This document shows positions 34,195-55,456 of a DNA stretch of 64,000 nt, piece after piece. The translations under genes were made by a program, and so were the position numbers. Under the pieces are notes generated by a model. The model did no database searches. It worked only from the letters and a program-made list of their open reading frames with translations, and was not told the origin of the DNA. This DNA comes from Saccostrea cucullata (lineage: Eukaryota): the NCBI RefSeq assembly GCF_032062105.1, contig NW_026924209.1:1-64000 (forward strand). The letters are read 5' to 3'. Within the stretch, counting starts at the first letter, position 1. Each line of letters opens with the position of its first letter.

Positions 34195-34585
34195 ATGGCA
34201 GAGAAGACAGATTGTGAAGGAAGGACGGAAGATGACGGAAGTGTAAGTATATTTCTCATATGCATGAAAATGCATAGGGGAAAATATACAATTTTGTTTT
34301 TAAATTGACAGAAATATTTTGCATTTCAATATATGCTTAAATGAATAAACATATTTCTGAATCCATGTTTCATGTATCAAGACTCAGAATTTAAATGCAT
34401 GACGTTTTAAAATAACTAAGGATTCTACAAAGTGTCTTCCAGTCATAATGTTACAATTTCTAGTACGATTCAGTTTTGTGTGAAACAAAACTACAATAAA
34501 ATAATATATCAACAGGAGCTTGACAGAAATCGATGGAAGACCGGCACCTTTGCTGGTACTAGTAACGAGACTCCTGATGTTACAG
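34195..34585 (+). CDS. Roco-HEPN gene coding exons 1-2 (34195-34242 MAEKTDCEGRTEDDGS; 34516-34585 ELDRNRWKTGTFAGTSNETPDVT)
   Basis: GTAAGT donor at 34243 (phase 0), CAG acceptor at 34515, GT donor at 34586 (phase 1) joining in frame to 35397. Confidence 0.55.
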
Positions 34586-52500: not shown

Positions 52501-55456
52501 AATGCTTTCGCGTAATGACTTATTAAGCAAATGTTTTGGTGAAAACAAAGAAAAATATGTTCAAATAGGAGATGTTTTAAAATTCTTTCATGACATCGGG
52601 GTTAGTCTTTACTTCGATGACACCAATCTGTCTGAAACGGTCATTATTGATATCCAGTGGTTTATAGATTCCTTCAAGAATGTCATTACTGACCCTAACC
52701 ATGTTAGGGACATTGCAGAAAATTCAATTGATTGGGAGAATTTTAACAAAAGTGGTTTTATTCCTGACAGACTTTTAACTGGCATATGGAGTAATAGACA
52801 TTTTAAAATGGATCTTTGGAACAGGAATCACGAAAAAAAAAACCTTCTCCAGTATATGCAGCGCCTTGGTCTGGTAGCTGTTGGAAATTATGCACACTAC
52901 ATTCCCTGCATGAACAAGCGTGCATTTGGAATTTCTGAGGAAAGATATTTTTTATCTCTACATAGCAAAACATCCGTATTAGTCTTTCGATTCCAATTTT
53001 TGCCGTGGTTTTTCTACTATCGTCTTATCGTTGCTTGTTTGACGAGGACCAATGGAGAATGGACGGTATTGGAAGACAATGGACTTTGTTTGTACAAAAA
53101 CGTGGCTTGTTTTGCTTACAAAGAACACGTTGTGTCCCTAGCAGTTAACATTCTTCAATTCAGCTTCAAATTTTTCAACCCACCAACGTCCTTGTTACAA
53201 AAGAAGTTGCCCTGACTGTTCGGGATACTGTTGAAAGGCTATTGCAAGAACTCCTAGGGAATTTCCACAAGAAAATTGACATGTACACTGTTGGGTACCA
53301 ATGTAGTAATCAGGAGATGTTTTGTGAACACGATGACTGCTTTGTTGAAGAGAAAGCTATTTACAAAAAAGGCAAAATAAGGTGCCCAAGACATGGTATG
53401 GTCAATCATCACATATTAAGTGAATCGGCTCTTCTTGTTTATTGGAAAAAGGTAAACAGCATTGTAAATGCTTTGTAATAAACATGTACAAGACTTGTAT
53501 ATGTATAATACACGTTTTCAATGAAAAAAAAATGAAAGCGAAAATATATGTTTTGCTAAATGGAAAGAATGCGTAAAAATAAATATATTTTTTTAAGATC
53601 ACGTGAGATATATTAAATATTATATTATTATATTGTATTAATGAACGCATAATCAAAAAACAGTTATACATATTTGTCTCATTTTTCATCATTGATATTG
53701 CATATTCTTAAAAAAAAATTATTATCTTTATTTTTAGGATGTTATAGCTGAGATTTCAGGTATCTTAAAGGAATGCATATTAAAAGTTAAAAAATAAATA
53801 AAAAACGAGACATTGCTCTTAAAATTGTGTGTTTCTTAAGTTAAACTAATTTTAATCAGATTAGGATCTGTTTAAACGGAGATATCAGGTATCAAATATT
53901 GATTCAATTTGCATTCCAGTAAACATACTATACTATTTTTCCAAAAATAATTGATTTTAAATGATTTGTTGCTTCAGTTTTATAACTTTCTTGGTTTATA
54001 ATATGCAATCAGATTTGGATGACATGACGGATCAAGATAAATGCACCCGTCTGTCCGAACTGGAATTGAAAAAAAGGAATTTCAAGTCGTTCGAAAAACT
54101 CACGAAGACAGGAAGAGACGCTTTGCAGCTCTATTTTGACAGAATATTTCCACCTGTAGACCTGGTTACAACCCTTGCTACAAACAAGGACAATTTACAA
54201 CGTGGACAATATAAAATGAATCAAGATCAATGTACCCTGCTTTTTCCAGGTATTCTATAAATATAGAGGCGCCCAATATTCTCTTTACTTTTGTTTTGGA
54301 CACATTTTGGACAGTATGTCAAAGGGATTGTACTTTACACAAAAATTCAAAACCTTATATTTTCCTCTCTTCACCTGTGTTTTTGTTTTTTGTTTTAAAC
54401 AAAGCAGGGCGTAACTATTATACTTTCGACGCAGATATATCTGTAATGCTCGATCTTTCAGTCAAAAGTCGATGTTAAATAATTCTGATTTAGTTATAAT
54501 CTTATGTAAAAGATATCATAACAAAGGGCAGTAGCATATATGAGCATATGCAGCAAATTGGCATATTTGATAAACCAAATTAATGTCATTTAATTTTATA
54601 GTTATTTTCATCTTATAATGCGATCATTATCTTCTTTCATATGTCTACACAGCTGACAAATCGATTCCCACCTCCTCCACATTTGATGTAACCATAATGT
54701 ACAAGTTGTTGAGGAACTATGGTCCAAACCTTCTTCCATCAACCAATGGCTGGGGGAAGAAACCTGAAATAGGACAGAAGCTTCCCACCGATGACGTAGA
54801 AAGAATACGAATCTACAGGAATGAAGTGGAACATAAAACTCAGACAACCAACATCATGGAAAAGGATGACTTTGATCTGAAAAGGAGAGATCTTTCTCAG
54901 GTTAAACATCAATCTTGTCATCACTTGTTATTTAATAAACGTTTTAAGCGGTTTTTTTTTTCATTTCAATCTCACTAATGTGTGCTTTTTATATCATAAC
55001 ATACATGAATATGCACACCCAAAACTTATTGGAATTTTAACATCAACTGGTTAACAATAAAAGCTTTAGATTTACATTAAGCAGGTTAATTCATTGCAAC
55101 CCCTATTGCAGCATCTCTAAACACTGAAAAGGCATGTAGAAGGCATAGAGAGAGGGGGGTCAAATTTGCCCGCACCTATAATTTTTATAAATACGGTATA
55201 TGCTATAGTAGATTTCCATGTAGAGGCTAGTCATTGTAGCATTTCATTTCCGATAAGTAAAGTACTATCAAACTTCGAGATTTTAAAACACATATATTTA
55301 AAAATGTATAGAGAAAGGTCCATCCTAATCCCACCCAGTCATTCTTTCATTGAAAATAAGCTTATTGATCTATAACATTGTATTTTACAGGCAATACTGA
55401 GACTAAGTAATGGATCATTAAAACAAGAAATCATCTTCCTCAGACGACAGAGATAA
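34195..55456 (+). CDS. Roco-family gene: 2x wHTH-like repeats - ROC GTPase - COR - DZIP3-like HEPN; 14 coding exons, ~1234 aa if the frameshift at ~53150 is repaired
   Basis: Exons 34195-34242, 34516-34585, 35397-35781, 36820-36899, 41884-42063, 44479-45078, 46972-47226, 48654-48866, 52007-52104, 52250-53451, 53738-53759, 54013-54249, 54653-54900, 55391-55456. All introns are GT..AG with consistent phases and the frame is open except for a 1-bp deletion at ~53150. ATG 34195 has an in-frame upstream TAA. The first five exons are less certain than the ROC-COR-HEPN exons. Confidence 0.8.
35397..35781 (+). CDS. Roco-HEPN gene exon 3: N-terminal winged-helix-like repeat 1
   Basis: ORF 35315-35785; CAG acceptor at 35396; LTENQRVVLYTLLL...NTLEELEDRGLV pattern. 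Confidence 0.7.
36248..36634. repeat. Near-identical ~190-bp direct tandem duplication in intron 3
   Basis: TTGAAAGATTTAAAAGCCAACATA...GAGGCAGAAAAGAA occurs twice head-to-tail. Confidence 0.85.
36820..36899 (+). CDS. Roco-HEPN gene exon 4
   Basis: TAG acceptor at 36819, GT donor at 36900; phases 2 and 1 fit the neighbouring exons; QKPEKNPTIMRLMMQGRTDAIEHLIE. Confidence 0.6.
39215..39770 (-). mobile_element. Penelope-like retroelement 3' fragment (RT thumb plus GC-rich tail)
   Basis: SNIPSSPAYGVYISQLIRYARACS.Y..F..R...LT.KL..Q...RL..SF.KFYGR; a second copy lies at 45268-46500. Confidence 0.7.
39790..40855 (+). repeat. ~160-bp satellite array (HINE-core type) running into the assembly gap
   Basis: GCCAGAAAAGCTGAAACTT-like motif at ~39990, 40153, 40313 and 40475. 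Confidence 0.65.
40856..41036. other. Assembly gap (181 N) inside intron 4 of the Roco-HEPN gene
   Basis: Run of N. Confidence 0.99.
41884..42063 (+). CDS. Roco-HEPN gene exon 5
   Basis: CAG acceptor at 41883, AAG|GTAGAC donor; in frame with ORF 41901-42101. Confidence 0.65.
43660..43992 (+). mobile_element. Short Helentron/Helitron-type element
   Basis: (TCCG)n microsatellite near the 5' end; 3' GTGAGC-ACATT-GCTCAC hairpin followed by CTAG and a T-run. Confidence 0.6.
44479..45078 (+). CDS. Roco-HEPN gene exon 6: winged-helix-like repeat 2 plus a 26-aa tandem duplication
   Basis: ORF 44484-45263; TTTTAG acceptor at 44478; GTAAGT donor at 45079. Confidence 0.75.
45268..46500 (-). mobile_element. 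Second Penelope-like 3' fragment, split by a mariner MITE
   Basis: 45268-45443 plus 46299-46500 are colinear with 39270-39630. Confidence 0.7.
45444..46298. mobile_element. Mariner-type non-autonomous element, TA TSD
   Basis: TA-CGAGGGGTGTTAGAAAAGTTCGCG ... CGCGAATTTTCATGACAACCCTCG-TA; the empty site is visible in the 39430 copy (CAGTGTATAAATAATGG). Confidence 0.85.
46972..47226 (+). CDS. Roco-HEPN gene exon 7: start of ROC domain, P-loop
   Basis: RAMIVGCAGAGKTTLLKRL (G1 at 47082-47105) followed by STIGLEVH (G2 Thr); canonical splice sites. Confidence 0.92.
47968..48128. mobile_element. Palindromic (hairpin) MITE
   Basis: Two ~75-bp arms are reverse complements around a CTTCG-containing loop; core resembles the centre of the 49700-51835 fold-back. 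Confidence 0.8.
48654..48866 (+). CDS. Roco-HEPN gene exon 8: ROC switch II
   Basis: LSVMDFGGQCAYYACHQVYLSRRAFYLLVID matches the Roc DF(A/G)GQ..YY..HQ.(F/Y)L signature; GTAAGA donor. Confidence 0.92.
49700..51835. repeat. ~2.1-kb imperfect fold-back with a central ~210-bp hairpin (50650-50860), in intron 8
   Basis: 49700-49780 pairs with 51756-51835; 50400-50570 pairs with 50934-51108; left arm has a ~230-bp tandem duplication; 51165-51450 is also found inverted at 25415-25710. Confidence 0.8.
52007..52104 (+). CDS. Roco-HEPN gene exon 9: ROC G4
   Basis: EYLLFWLKSVHTY...APVMIVGTHLD, the typical Roc W(L)..I...PV.IVGTH.D motif. Confidence 0.9.
52250..53451 (+). CDS. Roco-HEPN gene exon 10: end of ROC plus COR domain (contains a 1-bp deletion at ~53150)
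   Basis: W.E.VP..W, LKFFHDIG..LYF and VIIDIQWF COR motifs (ORF 52277-53215); continues in another frame (ORF 53242-53478) to the AAG|GTAAAC donor. Confidence 0.88.
53738..53759 (+). CDS. Roco-HEPN gene exon 11: 22-bp microexon
   Basis: TTTTTAG acceptor and CAG|GTATCT donor; needed to convert phase 0 to phase 1; conserved in the paralogue at 63224-63245. Confidence 0.7.
54013..54249 (+). CDS. Roco-HEPN gene exon 12: N-terminal part of the DZIP3-like HEPN region
   Basis: NF..F..L...GRDALQLYFDRIFPP.DL...L.....Q...LFP; canonical splice sites. Confidence 0.82.
54653..54900 (+). CDS. Roco-HEPN gene exon 13: HEPN core with Rx4H motif
   Basis: FDVTIMYKLLRN...P.NGWG..P...DDVERIRIYRNEVEH (motif at 54817-54834), characteristic of the DZIP3-like HEPN family (PF18738 as I recall it). 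Confidence 0.88.
55391..55456 (+). CDS. Roco-HEPN gene last coding exon (AILRLSNGSLKQEIIFLRRQR*)
   Basis: TTTTACAG acceptor, phase 0; homologous to 3656-3724. Confidence 0.8.
   Translation, partial: AILRLSNGSLKQEIIFLRRQR

What the first reader, a model, noticed from the sequence alone, without database searches (positions are those of the whole stretch)
34195..55456. Roco GTPase fused to a C-terminal HEPN RNase-like domain: candidate GTP/dimerisation-gated immune nuclease
Seen: a phase-consistent 14-exon gene with intact ROC motifs (GCAGAGKT, STIG, DFGGQ, THLD), a COR domain and a terminal HEPN domain with Rx4H (RNEVEH). I recognise no kinase, LRR, ankyrin or death domain. Established: Roco proteins dimerise through COR with nucleotide-dependent monomer-dimer cycles, and HEPN RNases (RNase L, Ire1 KEN, Csm6/Csx1, Cas13) form a composite active site from two Rx4-6H motifs. 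Inference: ROC-COR could act as the switch that juxtaposes two HEPN domains, giving an RNase-L-like effector with a GTPase in place of the pseudokinase. DZIP3-like HEPN fusions are known from invertebrate gene expansions, but I know of no functional study of this architecture.
Basis: partly seen in the sequence, partly recalled or inferred. Interest (0 to 1): 0.85.

Follow-up and report, generated by a model that had tools for sequence, protein, structure and literature searches.

The report
Oyster Roco GTPase with HEPN tail
This is a real, transcribed oyster gene that joins a LRRK2-type GTPase switch (Roc-COR) to a predicted HEPN RNase domain. It is one of at least 40 such genes in this genome and many more in other bivalves, but the assembled copy has a one-base frameshift and the proposed GTP-gated nuclease mechanism is untested.

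Summary
The domain content is confirmed. Exon-by-exon Pfam scans find Roc, COR-A and DZIP3-like HEPN, and every quoted motif is at the expected place. The start (ATG 34195) and stop (55454-55456) also hold.

Three corrections:
- The gene is not phase-consistent as assembled. The large COR exon lacks one base at 53149, so the assembled frame stops at 53213, before the HEPN domain. A spliced contig from a public run carries the missing A, so this is an assembly error or a null allele.
- A 22-nt micro-exon (53738-53759) links the COR exon to the HEPN exons.
- My model has 13 exons, not 14.

The N gap (40856-41036) lies inside a 6.1-kb intron. Homologue collinearity and splice phase argue that no exon is hidden there.

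Spliced contigs and RNA-seq reads tile COR exon, micro-exon and both HEPN exons.

The architecture is not unique. At least 40 loci in this genome, and dozens of database proteins from Saccostrea, Ostrea and unionid mussels, are Roc-COR-HEPN. Sister paralogues carry Death, CARD, TIR, OTU or Macro domains instead.

The dimerisation-gated RNase idea stays plausible but untested: the dimer prediction gave no verdict. I found no paper on this architecture. Another first-reader note (s1-700951) flags the same kind of gene elsewhere in this genome.

The parts
34195..34242 (+). Exon 1 with start codon (MAEK...), donor GTAAGT, ends in phase 0
   Evidence: same MAEK start as S. cucullata homologue P0010. 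No read evidence.
34516..34585 (+). Candidate exon 2 (70 nt, phase 0 to 1)
   Evidence: the acceptor and donor fit the phases needed between exon 1 and N1. Inferred only.
35397..35781 (+). Exon N1: first copy of the N-terminal winged-helix-like module
   Evidence: collinear with P0008 and P0010; distant relation to exon B.
40856..41036 (.). Assembly gap (N), inside the intron between N1 and A
   Evidence: the junction peptide and phase 2 match the homologues without a missing exon. Not filled and not looked up.
41897..42063 (+). Exon A (start of the second N-terminal module)
   Evidence: P0001 aa 3-57, 65% identity.
44479..45078 (+). Exon B: main part of the N-terminal module (winged-helix core)
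   Evidence: AF2 model of P0001:1-262 has pLDDT 88. Winged-helix matches at Z 5-5.9.
46972..47226 (+). Exon C: Roc G1 (P-loop 47082-47105) and switch I (STIG 47160-47171)
48654..48866 (+). Exon D: Roc G3 (DFGGQ, 48704-48718)
   Evidence: The D-to-E splice appears as a 255-nt loose end of an X19 contig.
52007..52104 (+). Exon E: Roc G4 (THLD, 52078-52089)
52250..53451 (+). Exon F: COR-A, the COR-B-equivalent region and a Cys/His cluster. It holds the frameshift.
   Evidence: (COR-A 45.3 bits).
53149..53149 (+). Site of the 1-nt deletion in the assembly. As assembled, the frame stops at 53213.
   Evidence: paralogue has AACAATTC. table 4: the X19 contig has an A put in behind 53149.
53738..53759 (+). 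Micro-exon F2 (22 nt, phase 0 to 1)
   Evidence: joint 53451 to 53738 (GT..AG), and a loose end before 54009; sequence and splice sites. Matches P0001 at this position.
54013..54249 (+). Exon G: linker and first HEPN helix
54653..54900 (+). Exon H: HEPN core with RNEVEH (54817-54834)
   Evidence: HEPN_DZIP3, E 7.4e-6; joint 54249 to 54653 in X21 (4 reads), X22 (2 reads) and X19..
55391..55456 (+). Exon I: last HEPN helix and stop codon
   Evidence: P0001 aa 1023-1043, 90% identity. No reads laid here.

Best explanation
The locus encodes a protein of about 1,200 aa, one member of a large bivalve family built as sensor, switch and effector.

- Sensor (inferred): two divergent copies of a winged-helix-containing N-terminal module.
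- Switch: a Roc GTPase with canonical G1-G4 motifs, followed by COR.
- Effector: after a linker of about 100 aa, a single DZIP3-type HEPN domain with the catalytic-type motif ER-x4-RN-x3-H.

Shown here: the domains, the motifs, the splicing of COR exons to HEPN exons, the family expansion, and the swapping of the C-terminal domain among paralogues.

Inferred: a single HEPN domain cannot form the two-motif active site alone, so RNase activity would need pairing of two chains. Roc-COR, through its nucleotide state and/or ligand binding at the N-terminal modules, would control that pairing. The result would be an induced-proximity RNase for innate (probably antiviral or anti-transposon) defence, analogous to RNase L. 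Which nucleotide state is 'on' is unknown.

The assembled copy is frameshifted at 53149. An intact, spliced allele is transcribed in a public run.
For: - Pfam per exon: Roc, COR-A, HEPN_DZIP3. All motifs located.
- Closest proteins (S. cucullata XP_062610473.1 = P0001, also P0002 and P0005) score Roc 47-51, COR-A 34-54 and HEPN_DZIP3 62-89 bits in one chain.
- 29 of 120 P0001 homologues carry Roc+COR+HEPN and 9 carry Roc+COR+Death.
- Dozens of unionid proteins have Roc+COR+HEPN, with siblings carrying Death, CARD, TIR, OTU or Macro.
- In this genome at least 40 loci have a COR exon followed on the same strand by HEPN exons (my hand pairing of the tables).
- Spliced joints F to F2, F2 to G, G to H and D to E appear in RNA-derived data.
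- In the HEPN alignment E91, R92, R97 and N98 are invariant, with H at +5 or +6. All 44 HEPN-bearing relatives keep the motif, and 36 of the 37 relatives with a G3 motif have the catalytic-type Gln.
- Identity to P0001 by region: 56-65% in the N-terminal module, about 80% in Roc, 81-90% in HEPN. This fits a diversifying sensor and a conserved effector.
- Death, CARD and TIR, which replace HEPN in paralogues, act by induced proximity (my knowledge). This supports the same logic for HEPN.
Against: - As assembled, the frame breaks at 53149 and stops before HEPN.
- The HEPN homodimer prediction gave no verdict.
- No COR-B profile hit in the window, and no PDB sequence match for that region.
- Structure searches with a confident HEPN model (pLDDT 90.9) found HEPN proteins (Csm6, AbiF) only at noise level, Z 4-5.
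- To my knowledge no RNase activity has been shown for any DZIP3-type HEPN.
- RNA support is thin: 19 reads, all 95-99% alike, short contigs, and none on the last exon. No single molecule spans Roc to HEPN.
Confidence: 0.45

Rival explanations
1. This particular copy is a pseudogene or null allele. The 1-nt deletion at 53149 is real in the sequenced haplotype, so the product ends inside the COR region without HEPN. The family may work, but this locus, in this individual, does not.
For: The frameshift is in the assembled sequence. The family has other decayed copies: COR exons with 1-8 stops at C6306, C9537 and C15436, and a truncated tandem copy at 62480-63687 with an in-frame stop. Presence/absence and copy-number variation of such genes between haplotypes is reported for the pearl oyster (PMC9646362).
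Against: An X19 contig 99% identical over 461 nt carries the extra A and is spliced, so an intact transcribed allele exists. Apart from the single indel all other exons are open, with intact motifs and splice sites. Single-base indels are common assembly errors (my knowledge).
Confidence: 0.3
2. The HEPN domain is not a nuclease here. It would be an RNA- or nucleotide-binding or homotypic adaptor module, and the protein a GTP-regulated signalling scaffold comparable to the Death- and CARD-bearing paralogues.
For: The paralogues swap HEPN for pure adaptor domains such as Death, CARD and TIR. I know of no demonstrated catalysis for DZIP3-type HEPN. The structure searches gave no clear nuclease relative.
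Against: Strict conservation of the RN-x3-5-H motif and of the preceding ER pair in 44 of 44 relatives is what one expects of an active site. 194 of 202 pearl-oyster DZIP3-like HEPN proteins keep Rx4-6H (PMC9646362).
Confidence: 0.2
3. The protein works like an NLR rather than through the Roco dimer cycle. Ligand binding to the winged-helix modules would trigger nucleotide exchange and higher-order oligomerisation (a resistosome- or inflammasome-like assembly), and many HEPN domains would be activated in a cluster. COR dimerisation as such would not be the gate.
For: The set of swappable effectors (Death, CARD, TIR, HEPN) is the same as in NLR-type receptors, including bivalve NACHT-HEPN proteins (PMC9646362). 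Bacterial Roc-COR ('AP-GTPase') conflict proteins also carry variable C-terminal effectors (PMC8195603). The N-terminal module is repeated one to four times in homologues.
Against: No Roco protein is known to me to form such wheels. There is no oligomerisation data here, and the ligand-binding role of the N-terminal module is inferred from a modest winged-helix match (Z 5-5.9).
Confidence: 0.25
4. Gene-model artefact: the HEPN exons belong to a separate downstream gene, and the apparent fusion comes from tandem arrangement.
For: HEPN exons of other copies lie nearby (2579-2953 and 63442-63687). No single read or contig spans Roc to HEPN.
Against: Contigs of one run tile F to F2 to G to H through three GT..AG joints, with matching phases. 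Independent gene models in five bivalve species have the same order in one protein. Once the frameshift is allowed for, no stop or start signal separates the parts.
Confidence: 0.05

Closest known systems
Roco proteins (human LRRK2, Chlorobium tepidum Roco, Methanosarcina barkeri Roco)
   Same: Roc GTPase directly followed by COR. The best solved-structure matches of homologue P0001 are LRRK2 Roc-COR (E about 1e-10), M. barkeri 4wnr and C. tepidum 6hlu/8r4b/3dpu. The G4 motif THLD is the same as in LRRK2 (my knowledge).
   Different: No LRR, ankyrin, kinase or WD40 domains. The N-terminus is a winged-helix-like module and the C-terminal output is HEPN rather than a kinase. COR-B was not shown by profile.
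RNase L and Ire1 (KEN-type HEPN nucleases)
   Same: A single HEPN domain at the C-terminus of a sensor-plus-nucleotide-binding-module protein. Activity there needs back-to-back dimerisation, which pairs two Rx4-6H motifs (my knowledge; Anantharaman 2013, PMC3710099).
   Different: The nucleotide-binding module is a Ras-like GTPase with COR, not a kinase or pseudokinase. The HEPN belongs to the DZIP3 family, not KEN. No ankyrin 2-5A sensor. This is analogy only, not membership.
DZIP3/hRUL138-like HEPN proteins of animals, including bivalve NACHT-HEPN receptors
   Same: Same Pfam family (PF18738) with the typical RN-x3-H. Lineage-specific expansion and clustering in oysters (PMC3710099; PMC9646362).
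   Different: [quoted passage not shown] Roc-COR is not among them, and HEPN is mostly N-terminal in the NACHT proteins but C-terminal here.
Bacterial AP-GTPase (Roc-COR) conflict systems with variable C-terminal effectors
   Same: Same organising principle: a Roc-COR switch with a swappable effector position and many paralogues per genome (PMC8195603).
   Different: Those are bacterial, with N-terminal LRRs and effectors such as TIR, caspase, trypsin and GT4. HEPN is not named in the text I read. The present family is animal, intron-rich and has another N-terminal module.
Brown-algal ROCO candidate immune receptors
   Same: ROCO genes proposed as immune receptors that diversify by exon shuffling (PMC11378527; title and abstract only).
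   Different: A different kingdom and different partner domains. I did not read the paper beyond its abstract.

Membership tests
Roco (Roc-COR GTPases) | Ras-like Roc domain with G1-G4 motifs | tested here: met
   Pfam Roc 21.0 bits (exon C) and 21.5 bits (exon D). Each is below the cut-off of 27 because the domain is split over three exons. Motifs GxxxxGKT, T, DxxGQ and THxD are present. Homologue P0001 scores 51.4 bits.
Roco (Roc-COR GTPases) | COR-A directly C-terminal of Roc | tested here: met
   PF16095 at 45.3 bits against a cut-off of 35.3 on exon F.
Roco (Roc-COR GTPases) | COR-B, the dimerisation half of COR | tested here: inconclusive
   No COR-B hit on the window exons. A distant paralogue, P0028, scores 20.7 bits (cut-off 27) at the homologous position. 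A family profile of this region (A4) finds nothing in PDB sequences.
Roco (Roc-COR GTPases) | Nucleotide-dependent dimer-monomer cycle | not testable with these tools
   Needs biochemistry.
HEPN superfamily, DZIP3/hRUL138-like family | Profile match to PF18738 | tested here: met
   Exon H alone scores E 7.4e-6, 26.3 bits (cut-off 27), covering profile positions 51-112 of 144. It is 89% identical to the P0001 domain, which scores 78.6 bits. The spliced domain was not joined or scored.
HEPN superfamily, DZIP3/hRUL138-like family | Rx4-6H motif with a polar residue (N) after R | tested here: met
   RNEVEH at 54817-54834. R and N are invariant in 38 aligned domains, and the motif is present in 44 of 44 relatives.
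HEPN superfamily, DZIP3/hRUL138-like family | All-alpha HEPN fold | tested here: inconclusive
   The AF2 model of P0001:900-1044 is all-helical with pLDDT 90.9. Foldseek against PDB finds nothing at E<=0.001. VIA-align wide gives Csm6 4rgp Z 4.9 and AbiF 8vz6 Z 4.2, not above background.
HEPN superfamily, DZIP3/hRUL138-like family | Dimer with a composite active site; RNase activity | not testable with these tools
   The homodimer prediction gave no verdict. Activity needs an assay.
RNase L / Ire1 (kinase-KEN) | Kinase or pseudokinase domain next to the nuclease domain | tested here: not met
   No protein-kinase hit in any exon or in homologues P0001, P0002 and P0005.
NLR / STAND receptors | NACHT or NB-ARC STAND NTPase | tested here: not met
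   Only weak P-loop-level hits (NACHT E 0.026, nSTAND E 0.014-0.07) on the Roc P-loop exon. The Roc and COR profiles explain the region.

The most novel reading that the evidence does not exclude
Bivalves possess a large, so far undescribed class of intracellular immune receptors in which a Roc-COR GTPase takes the place of the STAND ATPase of NLRs. Winged-helix modules would sense a ligand, possibly nucleic acid. The GTPase would switch, and a swappable C-terminal domain (HEPN RNase, Death, CARD, TIR, OTU, Macro) would execute. The HEPN members, including this gene, would then be GTP-controlled antiviral RNases, a functional counterpart of RNase L that arose independently.
Probability: 0.3. 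Interest if true: 0.8.

Novelty: new variant of a known kind. Interest (0 to 1): 0.5.

Why it matters
If the family works as inferred, it shows a GTPase switch of the LRRK2 type wired directly to a nuclease. That would give Roco biology a simple enzymatic read-out of the nucleotide and oligomeric state.

It would also show that animals built NLR-like receptor repertoires on a Roc-COR core. Bivalves lack adaptive immunity and suffer viral mass mortalities, so a family of dozens of putative RNase receptors is a concrete candidate for antiviral defence.

The components are individually known, and the combination is already visible in automatic database annotation. The finding is therefore an interesting lead rather than a surprise.

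Tried and rejected
- Homodimer prediction of the HEPN domain (P0001:900-1044, two copies): no verdict, score 0.02 against a mark of 0.32. This is evidence neither for nor against binding.
- Foldseek of the HEPN model against PDB: nothing at E<=0.001. VIA-align wide: HEPN proteins only at noise level.
- Foldseek of the N-terminal module against PDB: only weak winged-helix and ROQ rows, E>=0.3.
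- Family profile of the COR-B-equivalent region against PDB sequences: no hit at E<=1.
- BLASTP of exon N1 against exon B: no similarity, E 20. The relation appears only marginally in single-pass phmmer (E about 1e-3) and after iteration.
- An intron as explanation of the frame change at 53149: rejected. It would be about 20 nt long and would delete sequence that paralogues translate.
- A donor at 53419 joining directly to 54013 (my first model, from the paralogue's in-frame stop): rejected after the reads showed 53451 to 53738.
- An exon hidden in the N gap: not supported.
- Literature searches for Roco+HEPN, 'kinase pats1'+oyster and HEPN+OsHV-1 found no study of this architecture.
- RNA-seq runs X21-X23 gave only 19 reads, so expression level, the 5' end, the last exon and induction could not be judged.
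- The spliced protein of the window was never joined, searched or folded. Exons were used by reference, and the natural homologue P0001 served as proxy.

Full report
**What is in the sequence.** The window is AT-rich (about 30-35% GC) intron-rich animal DNA. Between 34195 and 55456 the + strand carries a chain of open segments. Exon-by-exon Pfam scans, by reference and never joined, gave these hits:
- Roc on 46917-47240 (21.0 bits) and on 48692-48901 (21.5 bits).
- COR-A on 52277-53215 (45.3 bits, cut-off 35.3).
- HEPN_DZIP3 on 54697-54978 (26.3 bits, E 7.4e-6, cut-off 27, profile positions 51-112 of 144).

No kinase, LRR, ankyrin or death domain was hit. All quoted motifs are present: GCAGAGKT 47082-47105, STIG 47160-47171, DFGGQ 48704-48718, THLD 52078-52089, RNEVEH 54817-54834.

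**Gene model.** I mapped the closest database proteins onto the window with tblastn and read the splice sites. The exons are:

| Exon | Coordinates | Note |
|---|---|---|
| 1 | 34195-34242 | start MAEK, as in homologue P0010 |
| 2 | 34516-34585 | candidate, inferred from phases only |
| N1 | 35397-35781 | |
| A | 41897-42063 | |
| B | 44479-45078 | |
| C | 46972-47226 | |
| D | 48654-48866 | |
| E | 52007-52104 | |
| F | 52250-53451 | |
| F2 | 53738-53759 | micro-exon |
| G | 54013-54249 | |
| H | 54653-54900 | |
| I | 55391-55456 | stop at 55454-55456 |

That is 13 exons.

**The gap.** The N run at 40856-41036 lies in the 6.1-kb intron between N1 and A. N1 ends in phase 2 and A begins in phase 2. 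The junction peptide (...ITLR|LVLKR...) is collinear with the S. cucullata proteins P0010 and P0008 (...ITTMR LIVEG...). No coding exon therefore appears to be hidden, but no read was laid over this junction.

**The frameshift.** The gene is not phase-consistent as assembled.
- Exon F changes frame at 53149. Aligned to the tandem paralogue at 62560-62830 (93% identical), the window lacks one A (AAC-ATTC against AACAATTC).
- Eleven of the 12 best paralogous COR exons in this genome have open frames of 403-454 aa, against 321 aa here.
- My exon lengths sum to 3611 nt, which is 2 mod 3. One more base gives 1203 codons plus the stop.
- Read as assembled, the frame stops at 53213, inside the COR region and before HEPN.
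- A splice cannot explain the frame change. It would need a roughly 20-nt intron that removes sequence paralogues translate.

**Read evidence.** Four runs were laid on 51850-55750. Run X19 consists of Logan contigs with no library type on record. It contains GT..AG joints, so I treat it as RNA-derived. It holds a 486-nt contig that is 99% identical over 52989-53449 and has an A inserted behind 53149. An intact allele of this locus therefore exists and is transcribed.

The same data show the following joints:
- 53451 to 53738, from the COR exon into the micro-exon.
- A contig running from the micro-exon into 54013.
- 54249 to 54653, seen in X19 and in oligo-dT RNA-seq raw reads (X21 4 reads, X22 2 reads).
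- The D-to-E joint, seen as a 255-nt loose end.

The contigs thus tile COR exon, micro-exon, HEPN exon G and HEPN exon H. The two contigs that meet in the micro-exon overlap by only 19 nt, and no single molecule spans Roc to HEPN. Nothing was laid on exon I. The RNA-seq reads are few (19) and all 95-99% alike, so they come from another allele or a very close copy. Expression is low in those samples.

**Relatives.**
- A full HMMER search with the COR exon found 556 proteins. The best are RefSeq models of Saccostrea cucullata.
- P0001 (XP_062610473.1, named 'probable serine/threonine-protein kinase pats1'), P0002 and P0005 each contain Roc, COR-A and HEPN_DZIP3 (62-89 bits) in one chain.
- Of the 120 listed homologues of P0001, 29 are Roc+COR+HEPN (S. 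cucullata, S. echinata, Ostrea edulis), 9 are Roc+COR+Death and 2 carry ankyrin repeats.
- The architecture also occurs in unionid mussels. Potamilus streckersoni P0125 scores Roc 57, COR-A 53 and HEPN 91 bits. Dozens more come from Potamilus and Sinanodonta woodiana, with siblings carrying Death, CARD, TIR, OTU or Macro domains.
- Some oyster proteins have HEPN at the N-terminus of an Ig-Roc-COR chain.
- In the window's own genome (1.17 Gb, 23,869 contigs) the COR exon has at least 153 matches and the HEPN part at least 152. Pairing the two tables by hand gives at least 40 loci with a COR exon followed on the same strand by HEPN exons. Several of these carry stops.
- P0001's HEPN matches this genome at 93-95%. 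The organism is therefore a close relative of S. cucullata rather than that assembly.
- The contig holds a tandem cluster. Inside the window there is an upstream HEPN exon at 2579-2953 (55 bits) and a downstream partial copy at 62480-63687. Further copies lie beyond the window at about 64.4 kb, 117-121 kb and 76.5 kb.

**Conservation.**
- In 38 aligned HEPN domains E91, R92, R97 and N98 are invariant, and the His follows at +5 or +6.
- All 44 relatives with a near-complete HEPN keep ER-x-RN-x3-5-H.
- 36 of the 37 relatives with a G3 motif have Gln in DxxGQ.
- Against P0001 the window gene is 56-65% identical in the N-terminal module, about 80% in Roc, 72-78% in COR and 81-90% in HEPN.

**Structures.**
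- An AlphaFold2 model of the HEPN region of P0001 is confident (pLDDT 90.9) and all-helical.
- Structure searches with it were not decisive. Foldseek found nothing. VIA-align listed Csm6 (Z 4.9) and AbiF (Z 4.2), both HEPN proteins, among many unrelated helical rows.
- The N-terminal module (P0001:1-262, pLDDT 88) contains a winged helix. Nearly all of the 50 best rows are winged-helix domains, at Z 5-5.9.
- Exons N1 and B are distantly related copies of this module. This agrees with the scan's note s1-711044.
- P0001's Roc-COR is closest to LRRK2, M. barkeri Roco and C. tepidum Roco among solved proteins.
- The COR-B half could not be demonstrated.
- A HEPN homodimer prediction gave no verdict.

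**Interpretation.** The domains, the fusion and the family are shown. The mechanism is inferred from three points:
- HEPN nucleases need two Rx4-6H motifs, and this protein has one HEPN domain, so pairing of chains is required (PMC3710099 and my knowledge).
- Roc-COR proteins dimerise through COR and change oligomeric state with nucleotide (abstract of PMC11052575; my knowledge).
- Paralogues replace HEPN with Death, CARD or TIR, all induced-proximity modules.

This supports a sensor-switch-effector receptor with an RNase output, analogous to RNase L. Membership in the RNase L/Ire1 family fails, because there is no kinase domain. Which nucleotide state activates, whether a dimer or a larger assembly forms, and whether DZIP3-type HEPN cleaves RNA at all remain open.

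**Literature.**
[quoted passage not shown] Roc-COR is not listed.
- The pearl-oyster genome paper describes NACHT-HEPN and other DZIP3-like HEPN expansions, and haplotype copy-number variation.
- Bacterial Roc-COR proteins with variable C-terminal effectors are described in PMC8195603.
- I found no paper on Roc-COR-HEPN.

The architecture is therefore visible in databases but apparently undescribed. I rate it a new variant of a known kind.

**Scan context.** Another first-reader note (s1-700951) reports a ROCO-HEPN gene on another piece of this genome.

Noticed in passing
window 53149: Single-base deletion in the COR exon relative to paralogues. A public spliced contig (X19) has an A inserted there.
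   Followed up: yes
window 53738-53759: A 22-nt micro-exon (acceptor tttttag, donor GTATCT) links the COR exon to the HEPN exons. It is easily missed when reading by eye.
   Followed up: yes
window 35397-35781 and 41897-45078: The N-terminal module with a winged-helix core is present twice here and one to four times in homologues. The two copies are related only at profile level. AF2 model pLDDT 88; winged-helix matches at Z 5-5.9.
   Followed up: partly
window 53270-53420: Conserved Cys/His cluster at the end of the COR exon (C..C..C, then CPRHG..HH). Two Cys are invariant in 59 relatives. It gives a weak, probably spurious Rieske hit. Possibly a small zinc-binding element between COR and HEPN.
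   Followed up: no
window 2579-2953: HEPN_DZIP3 exon (55.3 bits, motif RNEIGH) of another family member whose body lies upstream of the window.
   Followed up: partly
window 62480-63687 (continues beyond 64000): Tandem partial copy holding only the last part of the COR exon plus HEPN exons, about 93% identical in DNA. It has an in-frame stop after ...HHILSE where this gene reads on, so it is probably a truncated or decayed duplicate.
   Followed up: partly
window 10226-12162, - strand: Three consecutive ORFs, two with DUF7869 hits (31.7 and 16.5 bits). Likely a decayed transposon-type gene between the family members.
   Followed up: partly
window 39228-39640 and 45272-46556: Similar translated stretches occur in two different introns (for example ...PPKHQR.DQVPWR... 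and ...MMTLNETA...), pointing to copies of one interspersed repeat.
   Followed up: no
window 54236-54756: RNA-seq reads of X21 and X22 differ from the window at the same six sites (for example 54236 C>T, 54657 C>T, 54672 C>T), and none is 99% or more alike. They come from another allele or a very close paralogue.
   Followed up: no
window 55391-55517: No read or contig was laid on the last coding exon or the 3' end in any of the four runs, although exon H is covered. The 3' end of the transcript is unverified.
   Followed up: no
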